From IMG/VR virus record IMGVR_UViG_3300027736_001324, positions 1-64,000 of that record: a DNA stretch of 64,000 bases, one strand, 5' to 3'. Every line of letters starts with the position of its first letter. Position 1 is the stretch's first letter. The position numbers and the translations under genes are program-made. Of this stretch, positions 17,987-40,395 are shown piece by piece. A model generated the notes under the pieces. That model was given only the letters and a program-made list of their open reading frames with translations. It was not told where the DNA came from and did not search any database.

Positions 17987-18005
17987 GATATTATATTTAT
18001 AGAGG

Positions 18006-21000
18006 TCAGAACGGATTGTTAATTACTGGTGTGGGGTTACCCGGGCTTGTTACTTGTAAACGATAACTTGAACTATCAAAAATGTTTAATACATTATTTG
18101 GAGTATTCAATAACAAACTTGTCTCTGTTCCAAATATTGCTGCTGATGGTAATCCATTTTGATTAGCAACTTGGGTTGCAGTTAAGTTACTTGTCGGTGG
18201 AGTGAAATCAGTGGTGTATACTGCTATGCCATTTACTATCCTAATATTAGAAATATAACCGTTAAAATATTCAGCATAATCCCACCGTTTACCAATTTGT
18301 ACTTGATTTGTTCCACCAGTATTTAAAGTTTGTACCACTGTTGCTGACTGAACACCGTTAATATATATGCTCATGTTAGTACCATCAAACACCGCTGCCA
18401 CATGAGTCCAAGCACTAATAGTTACGTTTGCGGTTGTAACACAACCGTTCCAATTCCCTGCACCATTATAAGTAGCAAAAACTACTTTGTCGCCCGGTGT
18501 TCCTGGTGTAACACCTCCTCCTAAATACAATGCATAAGGAATTGTTCCGCCACTAAAAGTGTTACAAACAATAAATCCATTGGTATAAGATTGCGGATAT
18601 ATCCAAGCCTCAATAGTCATTGGAGTTGTACTTGCGGTTGGGGTTAAAGTTGAACTAACAGGAGTAACAATATATTGACTAGTACCATTAAACAACATGC
18701 TACCTTCACTAATCAACAATGGATTTAAATCGTCCGGTACAGGTGTGTTAGGACTAGTTACTAGAAAATTATAACTAGAACTATCTAATCTGTTATTAGA
18801 AGAATTAAATGTATTCAATAATAAACTAGTTTCTGTTCCGGTAATTGCTGCTGAAGGATTACCATTAACATTTGCTGTTTGTGTTGCTGTTAATGGAGTT
18901 GTACTCGGTGTAAAATCACTAGTGTAAACAGCGACACCTTTAACTATACGAACATTGCTGATGTTACCGTGAAACAAGTATGAAGGATTACCCAACATGT
19001 CAGCAGAACCAATTACAACAGATTCAAGTGAATTATCATATAACGTAAAACTAATAGTCACATTCGCAGATAATACCCCATTCACCCAGGTCGTAAATAC
19101 ATTTCCATTCCGAGTAAATGCTATATGACTCCAAGAATTAAGAGATACTGGAGTTGTACCTAGTGCCGTGATATTCCATCCACTTCCCCCACCATTAGAG
19201 CAAGAATATAGTACAGGTATATTACTTGAGTTAAGTAATATCGTAAATGGGCCTGCTTCAGTCCCTATATTATAAAGTTTTGATATAATACCTTGATCAA
19301 GTCCACCTGATGTGGGATATATCCAGCATTCAATAGTCCAATCACCTGCACCAAATGTAAACTCAGGGCTAGCACCACTATCAACAACAGTTAAGTAATC
19401 ACTACTACCATTAAACAACATACTACCATCTATTAAAAAGTTAGGTGCTACTATGCTGGATGAAGGAGTGCCTGGACTAGACACAATCCAATCATAACTT
19501 GAAGTATCTATTAAATTATAATTGTTGTTGGGAGTAGTTAACAATAAACTTGTCTCCGTGCCACTGATAGCAGCACTTGGACTACCATTTACATCTGCTA
19601 GTTGTGTTGCTGTTAATATATTTGTGCTTGGCGTAAATTCTTCTGTATATACTGCTATGCCTTTAACTATACGAAAGTTAGAAATATATCCGTTAAAGTA
19701 TGCGCCGCCGGCACCATATGCTCCAAGATCGCTGCCTATTGTTAACTGAGTACCAGTATAACCCATATTAAAAGTCATTGATACTGTTGCTGTTTCAACC
19801 CCATCAAGATATGATGTTAGATTATTGCCATCACGAACTAAAGCAAAATGATACCAGGTGTCTATGCCAACTACGCCGGCGCTTTGGAATGCGCCGCCGT
19901 CGCCGCCATCACCAACGATCCAATACACTGTGCCATCAGTATCAATAAACACAAAATACGATGAATTTGCAACACCAACATAGCCGCCTTGAAGGAATAA
20001 TGCAGTTGAAGCAGCAAGACTATTAACATAAAACCAAGTTTCAATTGTCCAATTTGGCTGTCCTGTTGCTAAATCAAGTGCATCGCCTCCTGAACCATTT
20101 ATCAATAAACTAGCATTGGTACCATTGTATAATGAACTAGCACCACCGGTCAATGGTGTATTGGCATCAGGCACAGGCATATTTGGACCCAGTACATCAA
20201 ACTGATAACTTGAACTATCTAATAGATAAGTGGTATTGTTAATTGTATTCAATAACAAACTTGTTTCAGTTCCGAGTATTGCTGCACTTGGACTACCATT
20301 AACATTTGCTAATTGTGTGCTAGTCAATGGATTAGATGACGGAACAAAATCACTAGTATAGACTGCTATACCTTTAACTACACGAATATTACTTGCGTAT
20401 CCATCAAGATACGTTAGTCCGTTACCGGTCCATGCTCTACCAGTTTGTAATGGATCGCTGTTTATAAGACTATAATTTGTAACACATGTCTGTGCAGCAC
20501 CTATTTGTGTTCCATCCACAAAAAATCTCAAATCAGTTCCGCTGCGTGTACATGCTATATGATACCACTGTCCAGTATTAAGTGTTGTTGGAAATATATA
20601 ACTATCTTCTGTAACAAGATCAGTTCTAAACCAGCTAAGATACGGTCCACCGGCACCAGAGTAATATCGCATCCACCAAGCAGAATATGCAGGTACTCCC
20701 ACATCTGCCCCATTTCCAACTAACACTAGCCCAAGATCAGGACCAATACTATTAAAATAATACCATCCCTCTACAGTAAAGTCTCCTGTACCAAATTCAA
20801 ATGCAGTATTACTTTCAACATATACTACATTACTAGAACCATTAAAACTTAAACTACCAGTAGGATCAAATGGATTTGCAGCACTAGGAACTGGCATGTT
20901 TGGTCCTAATACATTATAATGATTACTAGAACTATCTAACAAATATGTCCCGTTGTTATATTGTGTATTCAATAACAATTTAGTCTGTGAACCACTAATA

Positions 21001-22274
21001 GCACTACTTGGACTACCATTAACATTTGCTCCCTGTACACTTGTTAATTGGTTTGTTGATGTAATAAAATTATTAGTATATACTGCTACTCCCGATACAT
21101 AACGGAAGTTTGACATATACCCAGTATAATAAAATTGAGATCCAGCATAATTTCCAATATACAATGTACTATTAAGTGGACCATAAGGGCCAACACTACT
21201 TCCCACTAGTATCCCATCTTTATATACTGCTGTAGCGCCTATATCACCGTTACGCACAATAGCAAGATGAGTCCATGTGTTAACTGAAATATATGCATCT
21301 ATCGGTGGTTGTCCATATTGTCCATCATCTAATATAAGTTGTCCTGTTCCCGGATACTTCCAAAAATTAAGACCTCCGGGCGTAGTTGATACAAATGATT
21401 GCTGAGTTGAATTATCAGTTGTGTAAATCCAAAACTCAATTGTCCATGTTGCGGAAGTTGTTGGTACTCCACTTGGTATAGTTAAGAAATCACTAGTACC
21501 ATTAAACAACAAACTGCCAAAGAAAGGTGTCAACACACTTGGTGTTGGCATGTTTGGTCCAGTCAATATAAAATGATTATCTGAAATGTCTAAAAAATTA
21601 AAATCGTTATTGGTGGTATTCAATAACAATACTGTTGCACCACTATATATAAATGAACTTGGGCTACCATTAAAATTCTGTGGTTGCACTACTGTCAATG
21701 GACTACTACTTGGAGTAAATGCTGATGTGTATACTGCTATACCGTTTACTATTCTTAAATTACTAATGTAGCCTGACCACGGTGACGTTCCGTCTTGTGC
21801 TGTTGCCCCGATAGTAAACGGTACTGCTGGGTTTGCAAGTAGCGCACCTGCTTCCGTTTGTGTGCTAGCAGATTGTCCATTAACCCACATTGTGTAAACA
21901 TTACCTAGTCTGGTAATAGCAACATGATGCCACTGATTAGCTGGTGTTGCTATAGTAGAATTAAGTTGAATCTCCCAATTTGATCCAGTTATAGTTCCTA
22001 AAAAATCAAGGTTACTATTCCCGGCATGACCAAGCCCAACTCCGCCATAAGTAATACTATCAGGTCGTTTTCCAAATAATGCTTCAGTAGCTGCTATATC
22101 TGTATCATAAAACCAACATTCAATTGTAAAATCACTAGTTAAAGTAAATGCAGCATTACCTGGTGTAGTAAGATATTGATCAGTTCCATTAAATTCCATA
22201 CTGCCCGAAAGTAGTTCTGGCGATACGGTCAGCCCACTTGAGGCATATATTCCATCTGATAAAGTTATTGACAT
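18006..22274 (-). CDS. Multi-LamG protein, 6 domains; start revised from 22346 to 22274
   Basis: Six LamG repeats. MSITLSDG resembles the neighbour's MSISISGS start; TAAATA lies 4 nt upstream; the longer start would cross a terminator. Confidence 0.85.
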   Translation of the reverse strand: MSITLSDGIYASSGLTVSPELLSGSMEFNGTDQYLTTPGNAAFTLTSDFTIECWFYDTDIAATEALFGKRPDSITYGGVGLGHAGNSNLDFLGTITGSNWEIQLNSTIATPANQWHHVAITRLGNVYTMWVNGQSASTQTEAGALLANPAVPFTIGATAQDGTSPWSGYISNLRIVNGIAVYTSAFTPSSSPLTVVQPQNFNGSPSSFIYSGATVLLLNTTNNDFNFLDISDNHFILTGPNMPTPSVLTPFFGSLLFNGTSDFLTIPSGVPTTSATWTIEFWIYTTDNSTQQSFVSTTPGGLNFWKYPGTGQLILDDGQYGQPPIDAYISVNTWTHLAIVRNGDIGATAVYKDGILVGSSVGPYGPLNSTLYIGNYAGSQFYYTGYMSNFRYVSGVAVYTNNFITSTNQLTSVQGANVNGSPSSAISGSQTKLLLNTQYNNGTYLLDSSSNHYNVLGPNMPVPSAANPFDPTGSLSFNGSSNVVYVESNTAFEFGTGDFTVEGWYYFNSIGPDLGLVLVGNGADVGVPAYSAWWMRYYSGAGGPYLSWFRTDLVTEDSYIFPTTLNTGQWYHIACTRSGTDLRFFVDGTQIGAAQTCVTNYSLINSDPLQTGRAWTGNGLTYLDGYASNIRVVKGIAVYTSDFVPSSNPLTSTQLANVNGSPSAAILGTETSLLLNTINNTTYLLDSSSYQFDVLGPNMPVPDANTPLTGGASSLYNGTNASLLINGSGGDALDLATGQPNWTIETWFYVNSLAASTALFLQGGYVGVANSSYFVFIDTDGTVYWIVGDGGDGGAFQSAGVVGIDTWYHFALVRDGNNLTSYLDGVETATVSMTFNMGYTGTQLTIGSDLGAYGAGGAYFNGYISNFRIVKGIAVYTEEFTPSTNILTATQLADVNGSPSAAISGTETSLLLTTPNNNYNLIDTSSYDWIVSSPGTPSSSIVAPNFLIDGSMLFNGSSDYLTVVDSGASPEFTFGAGDWTIECWIYPTSGGLDQGIISKLYNIGTEAGPFTILLNSSNIPVLYSCSNGGGSGWNITALGTTPVSLNSWSHIAFTRNGNVFTTWVNGVLSANVTISFTLYDNSLESVVIGSADMLGNPSYLFHGNISNVRIVKGVAVYTSDFTPSTTPLTATQTANVNGNPSAAITGTETSLLLNTFNSSNNRLDSSSYNFLVTSPNTPVPDDLNPLLISEGSMLFNGTSQYIVTPVSSTLTPTASTTPMTIEAWIYPQSYTNGFIVCNTFSGGTIPYALYLGGGVTPGTPGDKVVFATYNGAGNWNGCVTTANVTISAWTHVAAVFDGTNMSIYINGVQSATVVQTLNTGGTNQVQIGKRWDYAEYFNGYISNIRIVNGIAVYTTDFTPPTSNLTATQVANQNGLPSAAIFGTETSLLLNTPNNVLNIFDSSSYRLQVTSPGNPTPVINNPF

Positions 22275-22303
22275 AGTGTATTTAGTAGATATTTTTGTCC
22301 AAC

Positions 22304-22326
22304 AAAAAAGGCACTTTCGTGCCCTT
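22304..22326 (-). terminator. Intrinsic terminator
   Basis: Minus strand GGCAC-GAAA-GTGCC followed by T6. Confidence 0.8.
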
Positions 22327-22369
22327 AGTGTTTCTTCCCATCCCATTGAGATATTGTATTTATATTGTT

Positions 22370-23125
22370 TTACGCTTTTTTACAGTTGTCTCCGTGCCAT
22401 CTTGCGTAACCATTAACTGCTACCTGTTGATTACAATGTGGGCACAATTTCTTTTCACGCTTTGATCCCGTTAATGCTGCTATCTTCTTTGCGATTGTTT
22501 CAGGTGATTGTTTTCTTCCTATTGCTTTTTCTTTCATCTTTTGTTTAGTTTGCTCACTGTGAGTTTTATTGAACATTGGATTATTCTCACTGCGCTTTTT
22601 AACTGCCATTTTTTCTACCCATTCTGCTGAGAACGGGGAGCGTTTCTTTCCTAACTTGCTTTCTGATATTTTTTTGCGAGACTCTACTTTTTTTGCACCA
22701 TTTTTTTCTCCTAATACTGCTTCACGCTGTCTAGTATATCCTTCTTTACTACGATAAAATTTATCACCGTACATTGGATTATTTTCACCACTAAATCTTT
22801 CACTCTGTAATCTAGTATATTCTTCTTTTAGTTTTGCATATACTCTACTTGTTATTTTTGTATCGTATCGTTGTTGATTTTTATTCTCTGCTCTCATCAT
22901 TCTAAGAGCATTGAGCATCTTCCAATGTTCTTCACCGGTAGGATATATTTTTGTTAGTAACCAATGACACACAAAATGCTCTCTGGCTGTAATATAGATA
23001 AGATTAGATTCATTATCCGTTCCACCAAGACTTCTAGGCAATATGTGATGATGTTCGTAACCAGGAAGTTTTTCATGCTTACCGATCGCAACTATTTGAT
23101 TATACCATTTTTTATATTTGTTCAT
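22370..23125 (-). CDS. Free-standing HNH homing endonuclease with NUMOD3-like repeats and C-terminal Cys/His motif
   Basis: EHHHILPRSLGGTD...N...REHFVCH; NPMYG/NPMFNKTHSEQTK repeats; CPHC...HGDNC. Confidence 0.85.
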   Translation of the reverse strand: MNKYKKWYNQIVAIGKHEKLPGYEHHHILPRSLGGTDNESNLIYITAREHFVCHWLLTKIYPTGEEHWKMLNALRMMRAENKNQQRYDTKITSRVYAKLKEEYTRLQSERFSGENNPMYGDKFYRSKEGYTRQREAVLGEKNGAKKVESRKKISESKLGKKRSPFSAEWVEKMAVKKRSENNPMFNKTHSEQTKQKMKEKAIGRKQSPETIAKKIAALTGSKREKKLCPHCNQQVAVNGYARWHGDNCKKA

Positions 23126-29208: not shown

Positions 29209-32200
29209 TTAAACCTGAGAATACTTTAATATTTTGTCGGAGATATTGTTACCATCTCTAATAGCAGATATCATCGAATCAAATTTATCTTCCATGAGAT
29301 CGTGTATTCCTGCTAATATTTCAGCAGACTGGTCTACTTTGGAACTTGATATGTTATCATTTGCCATTACAGTAGACAATGGTTCTTTCTTTGGAGGGTT
29401 AGTTTCTTGTTCTGATTTTTCTACTCTAATCTTTTCACCTGGGTTCAATGGAACTGCTGCTTCTCTTAAGCCAGCTTCAGCTAGATTTACATGTACCCCG
29501 CCCGGTCTTGGCTCAAATACGCCGCCGTCAAATGCATTTAGTTGACCATGAAAATGTCCACCTGTTCGGAATGCGCCCGAAGTATCATTGTATTCATCTT
29601 TAACTAAATCTAGTCCCAATGCTTTTAGTTGTGATTTTATTTTCTCACCTTCTTCTTTTGAAGGGGTTTTATTTAGAGAAAAGTCAAATGCTTTTCCTTT
29701 AGTATGCTGCGATTTTGGAGTATTTTCAGTATGATAAACATCATTAAATCCAGTGAATTGTGAAAACCCTGGAATAGTTTCCTGAACCTTTTTTGCTATA
29801 TCAATAAGTTTAGGATCAATATCTCCGTTATTTTTCTGAAGGTCACGGCCCGGGCTAAAAATCAGTCCTATCTTCTTAAGCATATCCGTACCTGCTTTAA
29901 TCATCCCTCCCGAAGTAGATGCTTGTGGTACAGGGGCTGAACCTGATGCTCCACTGCCCGCAGCAGTGGCCGGTGCGCCGGCCGGCGCAGTTGTTGATCC
30001 ATCGCCGCCGGGCGCCGGTGCAATTGCCGAAAGTATTTGAGACAGTACGTTAGGTAACATATCTGTTACCTTATTCATACTAATAATTAGTTTGTCTGAT
30101 GTTTTAGTTTGTTTCTCTAATAATTTATTATTGTCTTTAGATAAATCGTTGTTTATTTTTCCTAATTCAACCGTCTTAGCTGATACATCAATTGATCCAG
30201 AAAAGTTAGAATTAAGTTTCAATATCTGAGCATACCGTTGATCATTATCACCCTTGGCACCAGTACCACCTATCATGCCACTAAGTACATCCAATGGCAT
30301 AATTGCTTCTGGCTTGCCTTTTTCACCTACTGTAACTGTCGTACCTTTTTCAGTACCCGGAACAAGGCCTCCCTTTTCTTTCTTAGGTGGTATATCTGCT
30401 GCAGGTGTTGCCTCAGTGGGGGTTGCTTTTGCCCAGATTCTCTCCCTATTTGCAGCAGCAGAACGTCCTTGGGGAGAATTATCATAAAGCGGTGCTGTAA
30501 CAGGTACTGTCTGGTTTGTCCGCAATGCCTGGGCTTGTGCAGTTGTTGTAACCGGTGCTGCAACAGGTGCTGCAACAGGTGCTGCAACAGGTGGTTTGGC
30601 AGTTGTTGTAACCGGTGCTGCTGCAGGTGCTTCCTCTGCGGAGTCGTCAATTGCGTCATTTGCATTTATAGTTTTTACTGGGTTTTTTCCTCTACCTACA
30701 TATGCATTCATTGTACCTTCTTGAGTGCTTGATCCCGATTGTGTGGCTATTTTTAATTTGTTAGATTTAGCTAATTTTAATTGTTCCTCTACTTTTGCAT
30801 AATCTGCATTTTCTTTTTTAAGTACTGCTTCTTTTTCAGCCGTTTGTTTATCTACTAATGCCCTTTCAGCTTCAATTCTGTCTTTAGTAAGTTTGGTTTG
30901 TTTTTCTTGAAGTGCTGCTAATTCTTTAGATACATCGGTACCGTTTGCTCTTTTCTTTTCTATTTGTTTGGCTTCTTCACCCAAAGCAACTTGTTTTGCC
31001 AAGAAAAGTTGATTTTGCTGGACACGTTGAGCCTCAAACTTTTCTTTAAAGTCCTCGGTTGATCTTCCCATCTTATCTTCGAGTGCAGCTTTATCTTCTG
31101 TCAACTCTTTTTGTTTTACTAATAATGCTTTTTCTTTTTCTAATGTTTTTACACGATCACCCCACAATGCCAATTCTTCACGATTTGCAGAAGTGTTTTC
31201 TCCTTTTTTTATTTTTTCTTCAACTGCTGCTTTTCTTGCGTTAGCACTATCTATTTGTTCTTGTTTTTTGTCTATGTTTATTCCTATGTTTTCAGCCTCA
31301 CCTCTAGTACCTTTAAATGCAGCATTATACATTTGTTTAGCGGCTGTCAACATTGAAGATGCAGCTTTACCAAACATACCGCCGGCTTCTTTCATCTGAT
31401 TAGCTGCGCCTAATTGACCATTTAATAATTGAGTTTGTTTAGCTATTGCTTCATCCTGTGTCTTTCTCCCTGTTTCTACATCACTGGTGGTTCTTGGATC
31501 TTTAGCAACTCGTGATAGCATTTGATCCATTGCCTTCTCATCAAATGGTTTACCTTTATTTTTAGGATCTTTTTCCCATTCTAGCCTAAGTTTGTTTGCA
31601 TTATCAAAGGTATTAATACCATCTAATAATTTTGGAATGTCAAGGTCTGCAAGTCCACTAATAGCATCTGATTTTATTCTTGCTAGTGGTGCTAATTCTT
31701 TAAAACCAGCTCTTAATTCGTTACTCAATGTCCCCAATCTAGTCTGAGCAGTACCTTCTCCCTTTCTATATTGTTCTATCGTTCCACCGATCATTCTTAT
31801 AGCCTTAGCAGAAGAAGAATCAACTATTTGTCCGTTATTAGCCGCCGCTTTAGCTGTACCGGTTGCTAATTCTTTTTGACCAATAAGTTCTAACTTAGAC
31901 ACTAGATCCATCTGGCGTTGTAATGATAATACTCTTAACTCAGCTTCTTTATCTCCTCCCTTTGCTTTTTCTTGTTCATCAAATATAGCTGCACGTAATT
32001 CAGATTGAGCCATTGCAAGGTCACGGGCATTTTCTTGTTCTTTTCGTGAGGCTCCGGTCAATGCTGCTGTTTTGTCTAACTCACTAATATAATTTTGAGT
32101 ACCTTTAATTAAATCTTGTTTTGATTTACCTTCAAGTAATCCAAATCTAGCCTGCATTGCCATGTATTTTTGAGCATGTTCCATTTGAGCATTTTGGCTA

Positions 32201-33597
32201 ATCCCCATCTTCTCAAATGTTCTACTCATTTTGCTGTTTATTAAGCCACCTGTAACTTCAATAAAACTCTTAGCGCCGGCCATCGTAGTAGAGCCAAACA
32301 TTGCTATTTCTCGGGTGTTGCTTGATAATATTTTATTAAGTTTTTCAAACTCTTTAATAGTCAACCCTACCGATTTAAGATCATCTATTAAACCGGTAAC
32401 ACCTCTTGCCCCGGTAACTGATGCTTCACCTAATTGCAAGAAATTTTTAAATGCTTCATCTTCAAGTGCAGCACGGTCTTTGTTTAGTTTAGCATCTCGT
32501 CTTATAATTTCCGCTTCAGCTTGAGAAGCATATCCAAGAATAGCCAACAACCCACCTATTGCTACTGCCAACAATCCAATTGGGCCAGTTGCTAGTGTTA
32601 CTTGAACACCTACTGCCATCATAGTGGCACCAAAATCAACCATACCACCACCTGTTTTTTCTAATGATGATGCATATGCCTCTGCTTGTGCAGAAACCAT
32701 GGCAGCTGCCACGCTTTGACCTCTTACTCCATCTAATAACGCATCTTCATATGCTATTAGACCTTTATAAGTTCCTACTATTCCGGCTTTTAAAAAGTCA
32801 AACGCAGCCGTTAAAACAAAGCTACCGGCGGCTATGGCTCCTTTTTTACCAAACATATCTTTGAATTCTTCCAAAGCTTTTTCAGCTTTTTCTCTGGCTT
32901 CATTTTCTGCTTTTATTTTTCTTAATGAGGCTTCTTGTTCTTTGTTTAATTTGATAGTCGTGTCTATTATTTTATTATTACTATCAACATAACGACCCAT
33001 TGAAGCTAACTGTTGCTTATATAATTTTTCTTGGTCCATTGCAAGTTTAGCATTTTTTGCATCTGTCCCATATTTTTTTTGTAGATCAGGACTTTCAGCA
33101 AGACCCTTTTGCAAATCTTCTATTAATTTTTTTTCAATTGATTCACGTTCATTAGCTAATTGATGTAATTTACCCTGACTATCTTTTACTAATCCTAAAC
33201 TTTCAAGTTCATACTTGGCGCGCCGCTCAAAAGTTTCTTTTTGAGCCTCATTAATTTTGTTAAGTTCGGCATCATATGCATTGTCTTTTTGAATTTGTCG
33301 TTGAGTTAATTGGTTGGCTTCAGCATCTAGTTCTTTTTGACGTTCTATTTGCTTGTCTTTATCACTTAATGAATTCCATATAGCCTTTGCTTCGTCGTCA
33401 CGGGCATCCTTTAAAGCCTGCGCAGCTTGTTCACGTTCTTTTTGTTCACGTCGGCGGAGAAATTTTTCTTCCTCAGTTAGGACTTCTGCTTCTGCAATTG
33501 CTTCTCTAGTGCTATCATTTCTGGAACCCAGACCTTCAGCCAACAATTGAAGTTGTTCAAGAATTGATCTAGATAGATTGTCATTTTCTATTGGCAT
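29209..33597 (-). CDS. Tape-measure-like protein with hydrophobic segments and C-terminal LAS/M15-type peptidase motif; start revised to 33597
   Basis: Long helical protein; hydrophobic GPIGLLAVAIGGLLAILG; VGEKGKPEAIMP motif; SQHTKGKAFDF...GGHFH. The 33732 start would overlap the divergent gene. Confidence 0.75.
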   Translation of the reverse strand: MPIENDNLSRSILEQLQLLAEGLGSRNDSTREAIAEAEVLTEEEKFLRRREQKEREQAAQALKDARDDEAKAIWNSLSDKDKQIERQKELDAEANQLTQRQIQKDNAYDAELNKINEAQKETFERRAKYELESLGLVKDSQGKLHQLANERESIEKKLIEDLQKGLAESPDLQKKYGTDAKNAKLAMDQEKLYKQQLASMGRYVDSNNKIIDTTIKLNKEQEASLRKIKAENEAREKAEKALEEFKDMFGKKGAIAAGSFVLTAAFDFLKAGIVGTYKGLIAYEDALLDGVRGQSVAAAMVSAQAEAYASSLEKTGGGMVDFGATMMAVGVQVTLATGPIGLLAVAIGGLLAILGYASQAEAEIIRRDAKLNKDRAALEDEAFKNFLQLGEASVTGARGVTGLIDDLKSVGLTIKEFEKLNKILSSNTREIAMFGSTTMAGAKSFIEVTGGLINSKMSRTFEKMGISQNAQMEHAQKYMAMQARFGLLEGKSKQDLIKGTQNYISELDKTAALTGASRKEQENARDLAMAQSELRAAIFDEQEKAKGGDKEAELRVLSLQRQMDLVSKLELIGQKELATGTAKAAANNGQIVDSSSAKAIRMIGGTIEQYRKGEGTAQTRLGTLSNELRAGFKELAPLARIKSDAISGLADLDIPKLLDGINTFDNANKLRLEWEKDPKNKGKPFDEKAMDQMLSRVAKDPRTTSDVETGRKTQDEAIAKQTQLLNGQLGAANQMKEAGGMFGKAASSMLTAAKQMYNAAFKGTRGEAENIGINIDKKQEQIDSANARKAAVEEKIKKGENTSANREELALWGDRVKTLEKEKALLVKQKELTEDKAALEDKMGRSTEDFKEKFEAQRVQQNQLFLAKQVALGEEAKQIEKKRANGTDVSKELAALQEKQTKLTKDRIEAERALVDKQTAEKEAVLKKENADYAKVEEQLKLAKSNKLKIATQSGSSTQEGTMNAYVGRGKNPVKTINANDAIDDSAEEAPAAAPVTTTAKPPVAAPVAAPVAAPVTTTAQAQALRTNQTVPVTAPLYDNSPQGRSAAANRERIWAKATPTEATPAADIPPKKEKGGLVPGTEKGTTVTVGEKGKPEAIMPLDVLSGMIGGTGAKGDNDQRYAQILKLNSNFSGSIDVSAKTVELGKINNDLSKDNNKLLEKQTKTSDKLIISMNKVTDMLPNVLSQILSAIAPAPGGDGSTTAPAGAPATAAGSGASGSAPVPQASTSGGMIKAGTDMLKKIGLIFSPGRDLQKNNGDIDPKLIDIAKKVQETIPGFSQFTGFNDVYHTENTPKSQHTKGKAFDFSLNKTPSKEEGEKIKSQLKALGLDLVKDEYNDTSGAFRTGGHFHGQLNAFDGGVFEPRPGGVHVNLAEAGLREAAVPLNPGEKIRVEKSEQETNPPKKEPLSTVMANDNISSSKVDQSAEILAGIHDLMEDKFDSMISAIRDGNNISDKILKYSQV

Positions 33598-33680
33598 ATT
33601 AATTTTACCCGTGTTTTTAACTAATAAATAGTTATATATGTATTTATTGTTTGTAAAAATACATTTTTGGAGAAATATCA

Positions 33681-34502
33681 ATGACAAACCCACTAAGACA
33701 ATACTTTCGTAGACCTGCACTTTATCTAACATTACCTAGTAGAGGTAAATTTTACCCTGAAGGAGCATTAGAAATGCCGGAAAACGGAGAACTTGCGGTA
33801 TATCCTATGACTGCAATTGATGAGATTACTAGTAAAACCCCCGATGCATTGTTTAACGGTAACGCAGTACCTGAAATTATCAAAAGTTGTGTCCCGGGAA
33901 TAAAAGACCCGTGGGCAGTTCCCAGTGTAGATATGGATGCTATTTTGGTTGCTATTCGTGCTGCTACTAGCGGTAATGATTTGGAAATCAGTAGCACTTG
34001 TCCTAAATGTGAAGAAGAAAGTAAGTATAATATCAACTTGGGATTTTTACTAGGTAGTATTAAAGCCAGCGACTATAATGAAGTGTTTCACATGGGGGAA
34101 TTAACGCTTAAATTTAAACCATTAAATTACACTCAGGTCAATGAAGGCAATATGGGGCAATTTCTTATACAACGTGAAATAAACGGATTAGAAGGAATGA
34201 CAGATGATACTGAAAGAAGCAAAGTATCCGGTGAAATTATGAAAAAATTGACCCAGATGAATATGGAATTAATCGGTTCAGTAATCGAATCTATAACAAT
34301 CCCAACTGAAGTGGTAACTAATAGAGAATTTATTAGTGAGTTCCTATCAGGATGTGACAGGGCTACTTATGAAAAAATTCGTCAACATGTATTAAGACTA
34401 AGAGATAGTTCAAATATTAAACCACAACATATCAAATGTGTAAGTTGCTCACATGAATATGATCAAGCACTAGTGTTAAACGTTTCTGATTTTTTCGAGT
34501 AA
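33681..34502 (+). CDS. gp26: Baseplate hub assembly / tail chaperone protein, gp26-like
   Basis: LTLPSRG..YP, PMTAIDE, AIRAAT, two CxxC motifs, C-terminal DFF. Confidence 0.8.
   Translation: MTNPLRQYFRRPALYLTLPSRGKFYPEGALEMPENGELAVYPMTAIDEITSKTPDALFNGNAVPEIIKSCVPGIKDPWAVPSVDMDAILVAIRAATSGNDLEISSTCPKCEEESKYNINLGFLLGSIKASDYNEVFHMGELTLKFKPLNYTQVNEGNMGQFLIQREINGLEGMTDDTERSKVSGEIMKKLTQMNMELIGSVIESITIPTEVVTNREFISEFLSGCDRATYEKIRQHVLRLRDSSNIKPQHIKCVSCSHEYDQALVLNVSDFFE
34490..34496 (+). other. Candidate -1 ribosomal frameshift heptamer T TTT TTC
   Basis: X XXY YYZ pattern in correct phase two codons before the stop; -1 frame is open into 34550-34726. Confidence 0.65.
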
Positions 34503-34549
34503 GGCTTCTGTCGCTTATCCCCGAGAAGATACAGAAGCTGCTAGACAGC

Positions 34550-34726
34550 ATGGATGAAGAAACAACAACAATTAAGAAAAATGCATTAAAGTTTTCTTGG
34601 TATATGCGGGGCGGAGTATCCTATGAGGATGTACTTAATATGTCTGAATCGGAAAGAGAAGCTATAAGTCAAATCATAGATGAGAACTTGGAAACTACTA
34701 AGAAAACTCAGATGCCATTCTTCTAA
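34550..34726 (+). CDS. Small gp51-like protein (58 aa; missing from the ORF track); may be made as a frameshift fusion
   Basis: MDEETTTIKKNALKFSWYMRGGVSYEDVLNMSESERE...MPFF; position immediately after the gp26-like gene. Confidence 0.7.
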   Translation: MDEETTTIKKNALKFSWYMRGGVSYEDVLNMSESEREAISQIIDENLETTKKTQMPFF

Positions 34727-34734
34727 TCCGTAAT

Positions 34735-35220
34735 TATTCATTTATCAACTTTGGGATGTTTCATTAAGAGATGAACTTCGTTCATCTAAGAACTCACTTC
34801 GTTCGTTCTTATTTCTTTCAGTATACGGAATCGTTTAAGACTTTAATTGTATCGGATATATATTGCCGATTAGAAGCCATGGTAGTGCAAATTTGCACCA
34901 CCAATGGGAAAGGTATGTTTGCCATGACCGTCGTCCAGTGTTATCTATCCCCCAATTAATCGCCTATTTCTGACACTAACTGCTACCGGTTGCTCTGTAA
35001 AGTATTATGGGACTGTAGTGAAGCTAACAACTTTAGTTGTTTCTTCCGCAACGCACATTCTATGAAATCAAGATAAAGTATTCATAGACTTGTTGAAGGT
35101 TCGCTTTGCCGATTGCCTTCTCGGTATACCCATAGTTATTGCTAACTATGCTTACTCCAGATCCGTCAGCACAGCACTACCTGTACAAACTCAAGGAGGA
35201 CTCACAAACTGAGCCAACGA
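34735..35220 (-). ncRNA. Candidate large structured non-coding RNA / origin-like region
   Basis: Longest gene-free gap in the window; at least 7 hairpins; G-U pairs and a GCAA tetraloop work on the minus strand. Confidence 0.55.
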
Positions 35221-35224
35221 ATTT

Positions 35225-35805: not shown

Positions 35806-36549
35806 TCAGGCACTGATAAATTTACACTTGTCACCGTGAAACATTGTATAATGATTTTTTGCTATTGTCCGATTACAATGTTCACATACTTTTTGATTTT
35901 TTAGTTTCTTCATAGGATTATTTTCACCTGAGTTTTTTAATCTTGTCATTGCTTTATTGTAATCAGACGCAGGAATTCCATACATTGGATTTTTATCACC
36001 CCTCATTCGGTCAGACAATTTTGAATTTCCAGTGAGAGATTTGCTAATATTTTCATTATGAGAAGCTGGTCTATTTTTTGCATATTTTTGCACACCTATA
36101 CTCTGATTCTGTTTTCTAATATCATCATGCTTTTTCCCATAATGGGGAGACTTCTCTCTAACTTTACCATACATGGGATTTTTATTACCTGTTCTAGCTT
36201 TACTTTTACGTTGTCTAGTAATTGAATTTTCTTTAACACCGTACCGATTGTATAATCCGTCTCCGTTGTGTTGGTTAAAACTCATTGCATCATCTTTGGC
36301 ATTGAGTGATTTAAGAAGTACACGCTCTAACTCGGCAACATATCCTGCCTCGCCTATGTGTAATATTTCAAAAGTCCACTCATTTCTGTTTTTCAATATC
36401 ATTGGTTTGACTTCTTTACTGGAACATATATATTCTTCATGGCGTGATGGATTCCAACCGTTGCGTATTTTAGATCCAATATACCACCGTCCGGATGGAA
36501 TATGAATCCACTTATAGATATAAGGTATAGTTTTGTTATAAATAGTCAT
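35806..36549 (-). CDS. GIY-YIG-like (Seg-type) homing endonuclease with NUMOD3-like repeats
   Basis: YIYKW...WYIGS, later LE...FN; three NPM repeats; CEHC...HGDKC; AAGGAG SD. Confidence 0.75.
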   Translation of the reverse strand: MTIYNKTIPYIYKWIHIPSGRWYIGSKIRNGWNPSRHEEYICSSKEVKPMILKNRNEWTFEILHIGEAGYVAELERVLLKSLNAKDDAMSFNQHNGDGLYNRYGVKENSITRQRKSKARTGNKNPMYGKVREKSPHYGKKHDDIRKQNQSIGVQKYAKNRPASHNENISKSLTGNSKLSDRMRGDKNPMYGIPASDYNKAMTRLKNSGENNPMKKLKNQKVCEHCNRTIAKNHYTMFHGDKCKFISA

Positions 36550-39451: not shown

Positions 39452-40363
39452 TTATTCTTCGTAAACTACCGAACTCATGCCAGCACCCAGACCTTGACGA
39501 GTCCAGCTTGGGTTAAGTCCATTAATCTCTAAGATATCATCACGTATATTTTGATTACGCTTTTCCGTATTTAATACACGACAGAAACTATTTGTTATAG
39601 CTGCGGTGTAATAAGCGAATGGGTTGGCTGATTTAGCTTCGTTGAAACGTAATCCAACGTAGGTAAGTTGCAGAATAGCGGAGTTCCGCATCTCATCGTT
39701 GTAAGTATACCCACGCCAATTGTATTTCATGGCATATTTTTCGCACATCATAATATACATACGGGCAAGTTTGTTTGTTACTTGTCCATGATCCTTACTG
39801 AATTCTCCAGAATTTAGATCACCTTTCCAATGACTTTTGCCCACGCAATAAAAAGTATTATTTTTATCAATCATATAATGTTGGAATGGGGGGAAGTTTA
39901 CTTTGACATGAACCATATCATCTACTTCAGCTTTGGTTGTCACATCCTCTAAGTCAGCAAAGATTTCATCTGGGTCAGCTTCTTCAAATTCAAAGATATC
40001 TTTTGCTGTTTTCTTTTTAACTGTTTTGCGGGGGACTTTTGGTGCTACTGGTACATGATCCCAATTCATTACTCTAAATATTAAATCTGTTACTGGGATA
40101 GATTCTGGGCTAACTGCGTCTTTTGAGCCTTGTTCCAAGCTAAGACGTAATGCTCTTGTTTCTTTAGCTTGTTGAATTGTTTCAGGTTTGAATGCGTATT
40201 CTAAACTTTCTTCAATAGAAGATTGGGGCATATCCACGATGAAATCATACCTATGATATTCGGGTTTAGCAAAATGACAGTATGCGTTTTTGCTTTCATG
40301 TATCTCTTTTAAGATATCTTTGTTATTTAAATAGTTGACAGGTTTTCTTGAGGGTAATGACAT
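39452..40363 (-). CDS. gp55: Late-transcription sigma factor, gp55-like
   Basis: YLNNKD, NWRGYTYNDEM, NPFAYYT...F motifs; 55-47-46 gene order. Confidence 0.85.
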   Translation of the reverse strand: MSLPSRKPVNYLNNKDILKEIHESKNAYCHFAKPEYHRYDFIVDMPQSSIEESLEYAFKPETIQQAKETRALRLSLEQGSKDAVSPESIPVTDLIFRVMNWDHVPVAPKVPRKTVKKKTAKDIFEFEEADPDEIFADLEDVTTKAEVDDMVHVKVNFPPFQHYMIDKNNTFYCVGKSHWKGDLNSGEFSKDHGQVTNKLARMYIMMCEKYAMKYNWRGYTYNDEMRNSAILQLTYVGLRFNEAKSANPFAYYTAAITNSFCRVLNTEKRNQNIRDDILEINGLNPSWTRQGLGAGMSSVVYEE

Positions 40364-40395
40364 AGGTCTCCTTGATTTATAGTTATGCTTGAGTG

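What the first reader, a model, noticed from the sequence alone, without database searches (positions are those of the whole stretch)
34488..34726. Probable -1 programmed frameshift fusing gp26-like and gp51-like ORFs (lambda G/GT-style chaperones in a T4-like phage)
Seen: the gene ends GAT TTT TTC GAG TAA. The heptamer T-TTT-TTC is in phase, and the -1 frame reads RVRLLSLIPEKIQKLLDS without a stop into MDEETT...MPFF. ATG 34550 has no clear SD. Established: tail assembly chaperone pairs next to tape-measure genes use such frameshifts (lambda G/GT). This pair lies adjacent, though divergent, to the tape-measure-like gene. Inference: gp26/gp51-like proteins here are a G/GT equivalent, giving 273-aa and roughly 348-aa products.
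Basis: partly seen in the sequence, partly recalled or inferred. Interest (0 to 1): 0.72.

Follow-up and report, generated by a model that had tools for sequence, protein, structure and literature searches.

The report
Frameshift site in phage hub chaperone
An uncultivated freshwater jumbo phage very probably makes a short (273 aa) and a long (348 aa) form of its T4 gp26/gp51-type baseplate-hub/tail assembly protein from one gene by a conserved -1 ribosomal frameshift; this is a well-supported new example of a two-product strategy already known from lambda G/GT and, as two separate genes, from T4.

Summary
The gp26-like gene (33681-34502, PF12322) ends GAT TTT TTC GAG TAA. The heptamer T_TTT_TTC (34490-34496) is in phase, and the -1 frame is open from 34490 to 34726.

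Comparative evidence for a programmed -1 frameshift is strong:
- All 38 related loci examined (33-100% identity), including jumbo phages 121Q, GAP32, PA5oct, Atu_ph07 and XacN1, keep an in-phase T_TTT_TTY.
- They also keep an open -1 frame into the same roughly 76-aa extension.
- There is no conserved start codon in that frame.
- In most lineages a hairpin follows 5-6 nt downstream, built from different arm sequences.

Other lineages encode the same extension in frame. They carry a short and a long gp26-like gene in tandem.

T4 gp51 turns out to be PF12322 plus a homologous C-terminal tail.

The divergent 1462-aa neighbour looks like a tape measure protein.

A chaperone role like G/GT is inferred, not shown. 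I found no sequence homology to HK97-type chaperones.

A 2022 paper that I could not read apparently identified the T4-like chaperone genes already. I therefore class this as a new, unannotated member of a known kind.

The parts
33681..34502 (+). Zero-frame ORF, 273 aa: the gp26-like baseplate hub / hub assembly protein (short form). GGAG lies 8 nt upstream of the ATG.
   Evidence: PF12322 at E 5.8e-22 and phrog_150 'baseplate hub'. All 120 nearest protein clusters end FFx-stop.
34487..34489 (+). TGA in the -1 frame directly before the heptamer. The overlap window in which a -1 shift can join the two frames is only 34490-34499.
   Evidence: Translation and script.
34490..34496 (+). Slippery heptamer T_TTT_TTC in X_XXY_YYZ phase. 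Both Phe-tRNAs can re-pair on UUU after a -1 shift.
   Evidence: Present in phase in all 38 related loci examined. In the 27 non-identical loci tabulated, the codon before it always ends in T, although it encodes D, H, N, A, V, T or S, and the first Phe codon is TTT in 27 of 27. Independent assemblies agree.
34500..34502 (+). Zero-frame stop TAA, one codon after the heptamer. It lies within the 6-nt spacer.
   Evidence: The stop sits one codon after FF in all 120 nearest clusters.
34503..34539 (+). Probable frameshift-stimulating hairpin. Its 9-bp stem pairs GGCTTCTGT (34503-34511) with ACAGAAGCT (34531-34539), and it starts 6 nt after the heptamer.
   Evidence: Minimum free energy -16.1 kcal/mol. 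No synonymous-codon shuffle out of 300 was as stable, z -3.9. Over 23 loci the Stouffer Z is -8.9. In 11 of 23 loci a helix of 6 bp or more starts 5-6 nt after the heptamer, with at least five different arm sequences.
34490..34726 (+). -1 frame reading into the 76-aa C-terminal extension, which is gp51-tail-like: FFR[ILV][RK][IL]L ... W[YF]MRGG ... TKKTxxPFF. The long form is 348 aa.
   Evidence: The frame is open and conserved in all related loci. The extension is as conserved as the core. It is found fused in frame to PF12322 in 20 natural full-length proteins of 319-351 aa (PF12322 checked on 10 of them). It is homologous to the T4 gp51 tail.
34550..34726 (+). Mechanical 58-aa ORF from ATG 34550. 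It is most likely not a separate gene.
   Evidence: The Met is not conserved. Four lineages have no ATG, GTG or TTG at all before the conserved domain. Codons 4-20 upstream of it show coding periodicity in the -1 frame, with 271, 134 and 361 differences at codon positions 1, 2 and 3.
29209..33597 (-). Divergently transcribed 1462-aa protein, starting at the second in-frame Met of the 1507-aa ORF. It is a probable tail tape measure protein lying between the portal gene and the gp26-like gene.
   Evidence: No Pfam or PHROG hit. It is rich in Ala, Lys, Glu and Leu. Nearly all nearest named clusters by language-model features are tape measure proteins, the top score being 0.92. Syntenic proteins of 720-800 aa occur in PA5oct, 121Q, GAP32 and L043, with only weak mutual similarity.

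Best explanation
One late gene of a T4-related jumbo phage yields two proteins that share 272 N-terminal residues.

Mechanism. Most ribosomes stop at TAA 34500 and release the 273-aa gp26-like protein. A fraction pause over the hairpin at 34503-34539 while the two Phe-tRNAs sit on UUU UUC. These slip back one base on U_UUU_UUC (34490-34496) and continue in the -1 frame to 34726, giving a 348-aa gp51-like protein with a helical 76-aa C-terminal domain.

What is shown:
- the sequence anatomy;
- its conservation;
- homology of the two products to T4 gp26 and gp51;
- the existence of lineages that encode the short and long forms as two separate genes.

What is inferred:
- that the shift is ribosomal;
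- its efficiency;
- that both forms act together as assembly chaperones for the baseplate hub and tape measure (the T4-type counterpart of lambda G/GT) and are probably not virion components.

My estimates: recoding that joins the two frames, 0.9. That it is ribosomal -1 slippage, 0.8. That it has a G/GT-like chaperone function with the neighbouring tape measure candidate, 0.6. The overall confidence given (0.8) is for the ribosomal -1 frameshift producing a gp26-like and a gp51-like protein.
For: (1) The heptamer is in phase and the -1 frame is open.

(2) The same arrangement occurs in all 30 IMG/VR loci and in 8 isolate jumbo phages at 29-100% core identity.

(3) Conservation goes beyond the amino acids. 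In 27 of 27 loci the preceding codon ends in T and the first Phe codon is TTT, against a background of 67% T at two-fold sites and 72% TTT. TTC-G follows in 23 of 27 (TTC in 24; PA5oct has TTC-A), which sets the Arg codon of the -1 frame.

(4) The -1 frame has 0 stops in 27 loci over 36 codons, against 95 and 60 in the other two frames. Substitutions show codon periodicity upstream of the ATG. There is no conserved start, and four lineages have none at all.

(5) The downstream structure is more stable than synonymous shuffles in 17 of 23 loci (at most 5% of shuffles as stable), with Stouffer Z -8.9. Helices start 5-6 nt downstream and use different sequences in different clades.

(6) Twenty-one representative proteins longer than 150 aa (20 of them 319-351 aa, one a 167-aa fragment) carry the extension in frame at their C-terminus, with a single Phe at the junction and no slippery run; PF12322 was checked on 10 of them and all 10 carry it. 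An AlphaFold model of one of them has pLDDT 96.5 and pTM 0.92.

(7) Three of these fused proteins were traced to their contigs, and in all three the fused long gene sits directly after a short gp26-like gene. One is a 327-kb contig with the same synteny: portal, a 783-aa protein, then the short and long genes, then gp46/47.

(8) T4 gp51 is PF12322 plus a tail. hhalign of the long-form profile against the gp51 family gives probability 94.2%, E 1.1e-7, and runs through the tail.

(9) Independent metagenome assemblies give the same T6 run.

(10) Literature. gp26 and gp51 are listed as hub assembly chaperones (PMC3004832, Table 2). PMC10885494 summarises Vladimirov et al. 2022 as saying that some T4-like phages carry one short and one long fused chaperone gene instead of frameshifting. 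PMC12846349 states that poly-T signals are known in TAC-N genes of T4-like phages.

(11) The short and long paralogues of L043 are predicted to bind each other only weakly. Score 0.40, best of 3 controls 0.00. That mark was reached by 51 of 78 solved complexes and 2 of 108 mismatches, but at 0.60 or under by only 5 of the 78 and by all 4 mismatches that passed.
Against: - There is no protein or reporter evidence, so the efficiency and even the occurrence of the shift are untested.
- FF at the C-terminus is an ancestral protein motif. T4 gp26 ends KEFFELL and uses the non-slippery TTC TTT, so part of the heptamer's conservation reflects the protein.
- The short paralogue of L044 keeps an in-phase T_TTT_TTC although its -1 frame stops at once. 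The heptamer alone is therefore not diagnostic.
- Five of 23 lineages (L025, L026, L027, L033, GAP32) show no convincing hairpin.
- In the window's own subclade the Met at extension codon 21 is conserved, so extra internal initiation cannot be excluded.
- For the chaperone reading: no Pfam tail-assembly-chaperone family matches. hhalign against the HK97 gp13 family gives probability 0.1%. Structural matches to chaperone structures 3klu and 2ob9 have only Z 5.0 and 4.4, below the noise level.
- The tape measure identity of the neighbour rests on composition, synteny and language-model similarity only.
Confidence: 0.8

Rival explanations
1. Two ordinary genes. The 58-aa ORF is translated on its own from ATG 34550, and the heptamer is a by-product of the conserved Phe-Phe C-terminus.
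For: The ATG at extension codon 21 is conserved in the window's subclade and in Atu_ph07. Many genes of this phage lack a Shine-Dalgarno sequence anyway. GenBank records annotate a separate small ORF in 121Q, GAP32, XacN1, Xoo-sp13, Phosso and Atu_ph07. FF is conserved even in T4, which has no frameshift.
Against: No start codon is conserved across the family. RsoM2USA, PA5oct, L013 and L030 have no ATG, GTG or TTG before the conserved domain. The 17 codons between FFR (extension codons 1-3) and the ATG are conserved as protein and show codon periodicity in the -1 frame. The -1 frame is always open back to the heptamer. Synonymous positions of the heptamer are fixed. The same peptide, including the part upstream of the ATG, is fused in frame to PF12322 in other lineages and in T4 gp51.
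Confidence: 0.05
2. The two frames are joined at the RNA level. RNA polymerase slips on the T run, dropping one U or adding two, rather than the ribosome slipping.
For: The site is a homopolymer run. It is 7 T in Xoo-sp13 and XacN1 and 9 T in RsoM2USA. The reads available could not test this, because the only RNA contigs end at 34398.
Against: The run is only 6 T in 21 of the 24 relatives tabulated, and in the window itself. From my own knowledge, that is shorter than the runs of about 9 or more that give efficient slippage by bacterial RNA polymerase. The strict X_XXY_YYZ phase, the fixed C-G after the run and a hairpin 5-6 nt downstream are what a ribosomal mechanism needs. A polymerase mechanism does not need them.
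Confidence: 0.08
3. A decayed gene or an artefact. A once continuous gp51-like gene has suffered a frameshift mutation, or the assembly has a homopolymer error.
For: Continuous in-frame versions exist in other lineages.
Against: The same offset and the same site recur in 38 loci down to 29% identity. All 120 nearest clusters stop one codon after FF. Independent assemblies agree. The extension is under purifying selection as strong as the core.
Confidence: 0.01
4. The frameshift is real, but the proteins are structural hub subunits or have another role, not G/GT-like chaperones of the tape measure.
For: PMC3004832 reports contradictory data and genetic support for gp26 being in the T4 hub. No homology to known chaperone families was found. 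The gene is not between a tube gene and a tape measure gene.
Against: The same review lists gp26 and gp51 as chaperones and says gp51 is absent from particles. No solved structure contains a relative. In the PA5oct record the neighbouring genes carry a virion mass-spectrometry note and the gp26-like gene does not. The title of Vladimirov et al. 2022, and the summary of it in PMC10885494, assign the tail assembly chaperone role to the T4-like short/long pair.
Confidence: 0.3

Closest known systems
Phage T4 gp26 and gp51 (PF12322 paralogues; hub assembly chaperones)
   Same: The zero-frame product matches PF12322, as gp26 does. The frameshift product has the architecture of gp51, PF12322 plus a helical C-terminal tail, and aligns with the gp51 family over its whole length. 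It has Cys pairs like those of gp26 and gp51. It is a short plus long pair.
   Different: T4 uses two separate, divergently transcribed genes and no slippery site: gp26 ends with TTC TTT. The T4 tail is about 48 aa against 76 aa here. In the tree, T4 gp26 and gp51 group together, apart from all jumbo-phage genes (100/98). The T4 duplication therefore looks independent of the tandem pairs seen in L041, L043 and L044. T4 also makes an internal-start product, 26'.
Lambda G/GT, HK97 gp13/gp13-14 and related tail assembly chaperone frameshifts (Xu, Hendrix and Duda 2004, cited in PMC10885494)
   Same: A -1 shift on an in-phase heptamer close to the end of the upstream ORF. Two products share an N-terminus. 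The gene lies close to the probable tape measure gene. HK97 is annotated this way.
   Different: No sequence or profile similarity, and only sub-threshold fold matches. The protein is much larger, 273 aa against about 130 aa. It has Cys pairs that give weak zinc-ribbon Pfam matches in relatives. The gene diverges from the tape measure candidate instead of lying between the tube and tape measure genes.
Poly-T -1 frameshift sites: T7 gene 10A/10B, and the GTTTTT site in chaperone genes of Vandenendeviridae and Andersonviridae (PMC12846349)
   Same: A U-rich slippery sequence decoded by Phe-tRNA. A -1 frame kept open across divergent genomes, which is used as the main argument there as well.
   Different: Here the site is a full canonical U_UUU_UUY heptamer. 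A 0-frame stop lies one codon downstream in the window's clade, and a hairpin is supported by synonymous-shuffle statistics. The protein family is different.

Membership tests
Programmed -1 ribosomal frameshift site (X_XXY_YYZ plus 3' stimulator) | Slippery heptamer in the zero-frame phase that allows both tRNAs to re-pair | tested here: met
   T_TTT_TTC at 34490-34496. It is in phase in all 38 related loci, and synonymous positions are fixed in 27 of 27.
Programmed -1 ribosomal frameshift site (X_XXY_YYZ plus 3' stimulator) | -1 frame open from the site and encoding a conserved polypeptide with no start of its own | tested here: met
   0 stops in 27 loci against 95 and 60 in the other frames. 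No conserved start codon. Codon periodicity upstream of the ATG. The extension is as conserved as the core.
Programmed -1 ribosomal frameshift site (X_XXY_YYZ plus 3' stimulator) | Stable RNA structure 5-9 nt downstream | tested here: met
   In the window, a 9-bp stem starts 6 nt downstream with -16.1 kcal/mol. Over 23 loci the Stouffer Z against synonymous shuffles is -8.9. A helix at 5-6 nt is present in 11 of 23 loci. It is absent or unclear in 5 lineages.
Programmed -1 ribosomal frameshift site (X_XXY_YYZ plus 3' stimulator) | Trans-frame protein actually made | not testable with these tools
   No proteomic data could be queried. The RNA contigs do not reach the site.
T4 gp26/gp51 family (Pfam PF12322, T4_baseplate) | Match to PF12322 above the curated cut-off | tested here: met
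   78.9 bits against a cut-off of 24.5. T4 gp26 scores 215.6 bits and T4 gp51 177.5 bits.
T4 gp26/gp51 family (Pfam PF12322, T4_baseplate) | Long form with a gp51-type C-terminal tail | tested here: met
   hhalign of A2 against A3 gives probability 94.2%, E 1.1e-7 over 236 columns, including the tail. The separate Pfam model PF28602, which is precomputed on gp51 homologues, is not in the local library and so could not be scored.
Lambda/HK97-type tail assembly chaperones (G/GT) | Sequence membership in a tail assembly chaperone family | tested here: not met
   No such Pfam family appears among 57 members scanned at E up to 10. hhalign against the HK97 gp13 family (PF06222) gives probability 0.1%.
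Lambda/HK97-type tail assembly chaperones (G/GT) | Chaperone fold | tested here: inconclusive
   The matches are YqbN 3klu at Z 5.0 and the HK97 chaperone 2ob9 at Z 4.4, among 48,161 chains. This is below the tool's stated noise level. Foldseek against the PDB finds nothing.
Lambda/HK97-type tail assembly chaperones (G/GT) | Gene located between the tail tube and tape measure genes on the same strand | tested here: not met
   The gene is transcribed divergently from the tape measure candidate at 29209-33597 (-). The next gene on the other side of that candidate is the portal gene.
Lambda/HK97-type tail assembly chaperones (G/GT) | Short and C-terminally extended products from one start, by a -1 frameshift | tested here: met
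   See the frameshift rows above. The need for both forms is mirrored by tandem short and long genes in L041, L043 and L044.
Lambda/HK97-type tail assembly chaperones (G/GT) | Binds the tape measure protein, is needed for tail assembly and is absent from virions | not testable with these tools
   There are only indirect hints. The PA5oct gp26-like gene lacks the virion mass-spectrometry note that its neighbours carry. PMC3004832 lists gp26 and gp51 as chaperones.

The most novel reading that the evidence does not exclude
The frameshift in the gp26-like gene of the whole 121Q / GAP32 / PA5oct / Atu_ph07 / XacN1 jumbo-phage assemblage and its freshwater relatives has not been described or annotated. 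The frameshift solution and the two-gene solution have replaced each other several times. In this reading, the short paralogues of L041 and L044 are former frameshift genes that lost their extension after a separate long gene appeared, with L044 still carrying the now useless heptamer. T4 made its gp26/gp51 pair by an independent duplication.
Probability: 0.35. Interest if true: 0.55.

Novelty: new member of a known kind. Interest (0 to 1): 0.45.

Why it matters
- Annotation. A core morphogenesis gene of a large group of jumbo phages is wrongly annotated in public records, as a 'baseplate hub' gene plus a hypothetical small ORF, or with the second part missing altogether as in RsoM2USA.
- T4 biology. 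The finding ties the puzzling T4 pair gp26/gp51 to the general rule that long-tailed phages need a short and a C-terminally extended assembly protein in a set ratio.
- Natural experiment. The same requirement is met by frameshifting, by tandem paralogues, or by divergent paralogues.
- Testability. The cultivable relatives (121Q, PA5oct, Atu_ph07) make the prediction directly testable. The conserved U_UUU_UUC-plus-hairpin cassette is a compact bacterial frameshift signal with many natural variants.

Tried and rejected
- Nucleotide search of the phage collection with the locus: no match.
- Pfam and PHROG on the 58-aa and 78-aa peptides: nothing significant.
- Sequence search of solved structures with the short form and with a natural long form: no relatives.
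- Foldseek against the PDB: no hit with E below 0.001. The wide VIA search gave only generic helix-loop-helix matches to the extension, plus sub-threshold chaperone matches. BFVD and AlphaFold DB only returned the gp26-like family itself.
- Pfam scan of 57 family members at E up to 10 for chaperone families: none.
- hhalign against an HK97 gp13 family profile: probability 0.1%.
- hhalign of the long-form profile against the single T4 gp51 sequence was uninformative, at probability 5.8%. It became clear only with a gp51 family profile.
- Search of the phage's own record for a T4 gp29 homologue: none. PHROG and Pfam on the 1462-aa neighbour: none.
- Laying RNA contigs to test transcriptional slippage: they stop at 34398, short of the site.
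- A column-wise covariation count for the hairpin was not attempted. The 3' arm sits at different codon positions in different clades, so I used synonymous-shuffle statistics instead.
- Vladimirov et al. 2022 could not be read. What I say of it rests on its title and on two citing papers.
- None of the genome papers on Rak2-like, 121Q, PA5oct, GAP32 or Atu_ph07 phages in the library contains the word 'frameshift'.
- The complex prediction for the short and long paralogues of L043 gave only 'weak support': 0.40 against a best control of 0.00. At 0.60 or under, that mark was reached by only 5 of 78 solved complexes and by all 4 mismatches that passed. I do not rely on it.
Full report
WHAT IS IN THE SEQUENCE

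The ORF 33681-34502 (+) encodes a 273-aa protein ending ...NVSDFFE. Its last codons are GAT TTT TTC GAG TAA. T_TTT_TTC at 34490-34496 is in X_XXY_YYZ phase. The -1 frame has a TGA at 34487-34489 and is then open to the TAA at 34724-34726. The only window in which a -1 shift can join the frames is therefore 34490-34499, and the heptamer fills it.

Tandem slippage would give 272 + 76 = 348 aa, with the junction ...SDFF-RVRLL.... The mechanical downstream ORF starts at ATG 34550 and encodes 58 aa. Contigs from independent freshwater metagenomes cross the site with no difference or gap, so the offset is not an assembly error.

WHAT THE GENOME IS

The window belongs to an IMG/VR virus record of 263,709 bp, estimated 69% complete.

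Neighbouring genes:
- major head protein
- prohead protease
- T4-type portal
- gp46/gp47-type nuclease
- late sigma factor

The zero-frame protein is PF12322 (T4_baseplate, E 5.8e-22) and phrog_150 'baseplate hub'. Its relatives in the phage collection are all jumbo myoviruses: Atu_ph07, Phosso, PA5oct, 121Q, GAP32, XacN1 and others, at about 30-37% identity.

COMPARATIVE TEST OF THE FRAMESHIFT

I examined 30 IMG/VR loci at 100% down to 33% identity and eight isolate phages.

Every one has an in-phase T_TTT_TTY at the end of the gp26-like gene. Every one also has a -1 frame open from there into a homologous extension of 70-82 aa, starting FFR[ILV][RK][IL]L and containing W[YF]MRGG and TKKTxxPFF.

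In 27 non-identical loci:
- The codon before the two Phe codons always ends in T, although it encodes D, H, N, A, V, T or S.
- The first Phe codon is always TTT.
- The second is TTC in 24 loci, followed by G in 23 of them, which sets the Arg codon of the -1 frame.
- Background usage in the same genes is 72% TTT for Phe and 67% T at two-fold D/H/N codons.

Over the first 36 codons after the heptamer the -1 frame has no stop in any of the 27 loci. The zero frame has 95 and the +1 frame 60. No start codon is conserved there: RsoM2USA, PA5oct, L013 and L030 have no ATG, GTG or TTG at all.

Within the window's own subclade, substitutions between the slip site and the ATG follow codon periodicity in the -1 frame, with 271, 134 and 361 differences at positions 1, 2 and 3. 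The extension is as conserved as the core, for example 84% against 76% and 62% against 52%. All 120 nearest protein clusters end FFx-stop. None of the eight GenBank records annotates a joined CDS, and RsoM2USA annotates nothing over the extension.

DOWNSTREAM STRUCTURE

In the window a 9-bp stem pairs 34503-34511 with 34531-34539. It starts 6 nt after the heptamer and has -16.1 kcal/mol.

Shuffles that keep the -1-frame peptide and the local codon usage were less stable in 300 of 300 trials for the window. In 17 of 23 non-redundant loci at most 5% of shuffles were as stable as the native sequence. The combined Stouffer Z is -8.9.

In 11 of 23 loci a helix of 6 bp or more begins 5-6 nt after the heptamer. 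These helices are built from at least five unrelated arm sequences: GGCUUCU..., AGGAUC..., AGCCUAAUUA, UCCUAGUAUC and CCAUCAAGUCC. The 3' arm lies at different codon positions in different clades. This argues for selection on the structure itself. Five lineages lack a clear hairpin.

NATURAL FUSIONS AND TANDEM PAIRS

An exhaustive profile-free search with the 78-aa -1-frame peptide found 216 cluster representatives. Of the 150 listed, 20 are proteins of 319-351 aa that carry the extension at their very C-terminus, and one more is a 167-aa fragment that does the same. All ten that I scanned carry PF12322.

Their junction reads xxF[RKY]..., with a single Phe and no T run, so they are not homopolymer errors. 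One of them folds with pLDDT 96.5 and pTM 0.92, as one unit in which the extension forms a helical hairpin.

For three of them I fetched the contigs. Each has a short gp26-like gene of 281-305 aa without the extension, directly followed by the long one. L043 is a 327-kb contig with the same synteny as the window. The pair of a short and a long form is therefore conserved, and it is produced either by recoding or by two genes.

In a maximum-likelihood tree the short paralogues of L041 and L044 nest inside a clade of frameshift-type genes (support 97-100). T4 gp26 and gp51 form their own clade (100/98). The L044 short gene still carries an in-phase T_TTT_TTC, but its -1 frame stops after three codons.

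RELATION TO T4

T4 gp26 (208 aa) ends KEFFELL, uses TTC TTT, and has no extension. T4 gp51 (249 aa) lies next to gene 26 on the other strand. It is itself PF12322 over residues 1-201 (E 3.9e-52) and is followed by a 48-aa tail.

A profile of the long forms aligns with a gp51 family profile over 236 columns, including that tail (probability 94.2%, E 1.1e-7).

FUNCTION

The review PMC3004832 lists gp26 and gp51 as hub assembly chaperones and states that gp51 is not in the particle. It also notes contradictory data on gp26.

I could not read Vladimirov et al. 2022. According to PMC10885494, it reports that some T4-like phages carry one short and one long fused chaperone gene instead of frameshifting. 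PMC12846349 cites it for poly-T slippery signals in TAC-N genes of T4-like phages.

My own tests do not show homology to classical chaperones:
- No Pfam chaperone family matches.
- hhalign against the HK97 gp13 family gives probability 0.1%.
- Fold matches to YqbN and the HK97 chaperone are below the noise level.

The divergent 1462-aa neighbour has no family hit. Several points suggest it is a tape measure protein:
- Its composition fits one.
- It sits where PA5oct, 121Q, GAP32 and L043 have fast-evolving structural proteins of 720-800 aa.
- Its nearest named clusters by language-model features are almost all tape measure proteins.

A predicted interaction between the short and long paralogues of L043 got only 'weak support': 0.40 against a best control of 0.00, with the calibration caveats given by the tool.

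VERDICT

The -1 frameshift interpretation is strongly supported by comparative evidence, and the gp26/gp51 assignment is supported. The G/GT-like role is a reasonable inference that fits the literature but is untested here.

The kind of system is known, so this is a new and so far unannotated member rather than a new mechanism. The repeated exchange between frameshifting and duplicated genes is the most original point.

Noticed in passing
L044:1660-1704 (also L041:5084-6978 and L043:5172-7008): Some lineages have tandem short and long gp26-like paralogues. The L044 short gene ends ...TCT TTT TTC AAT GAC TAA, which is an in-phase slippery heptamer, but its -1 frame stops after three codons. In the tree it nests inside frameshift-type genes, which suggests a decayed frameshift gene.
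   Followed up: partly
window 29209-33732 (-): The 1507-aa mechanical ORF overlaps the start of the gp26-like gene. The second in-frame Met (start at 33597) gives 1462 aa and leaves an 83-bp divergent intergenic region. At about 1.5 Å per residue this would correspond to a very long tail of roughly 220 nm, about twice that implied by the syntenic proteins of 121Q, GAP32 and PA5oct.
   Followed up: partly
window about 17990-18004, 22350-22364 and 40367-40381 (- strand): TATAAATA, the T4 late-promoter consensus, lies just upstream of several minus-strand genes, including the late sigma factor gene at 39452-40363. This fits gp55-type late transcription.
   Followed up: no
window 22370-23125 (-) and 35806-36549 (-): There are two homing-endonuclease-like genes (phrog_655; NUMOD3). 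One lies between the major head protein gene and a large structural gene. The other lies between the PDDEXK/RusA-like nuclease gene and the gp46-like gene.
   Followed up: no
window 18006-22346 (-): A 1446-aa protein has five to six repeated matches to 'baseplate wedge / virion structural protein' PHROGs. It is an internally repetitive structural protein.
   Followed up: no
window 34727-35224: About 500 nt after the extension's stop have no assigned gene. By eye there are two hairpins (34769-34787 and 34789-34809) followed by a T-rich tract, possibly the terminator of the gp26-like transcription unit. A 62-aa ORF (34771-34959) was not assessed.
   Followed up: no
T4 locus L039:3803-5229: T4 gp26 and gp51 are both PF12322 and group together in the tree. 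Homologues of gp51 carry a second precomputed Pfam model, PF28602, which is absent from the local Pfam copy. T4 gene 26 also has an annotated internal-start product, 26'.
   Followed up: partly
window 34103-34398: Two contigs from a lake-water metatranscriptome run (X17) match the gp26-like gene exactly. The phage or a near-identical strain also occurs in many freshwater metagenomes from 2017 to 2022.
   Followed up: no
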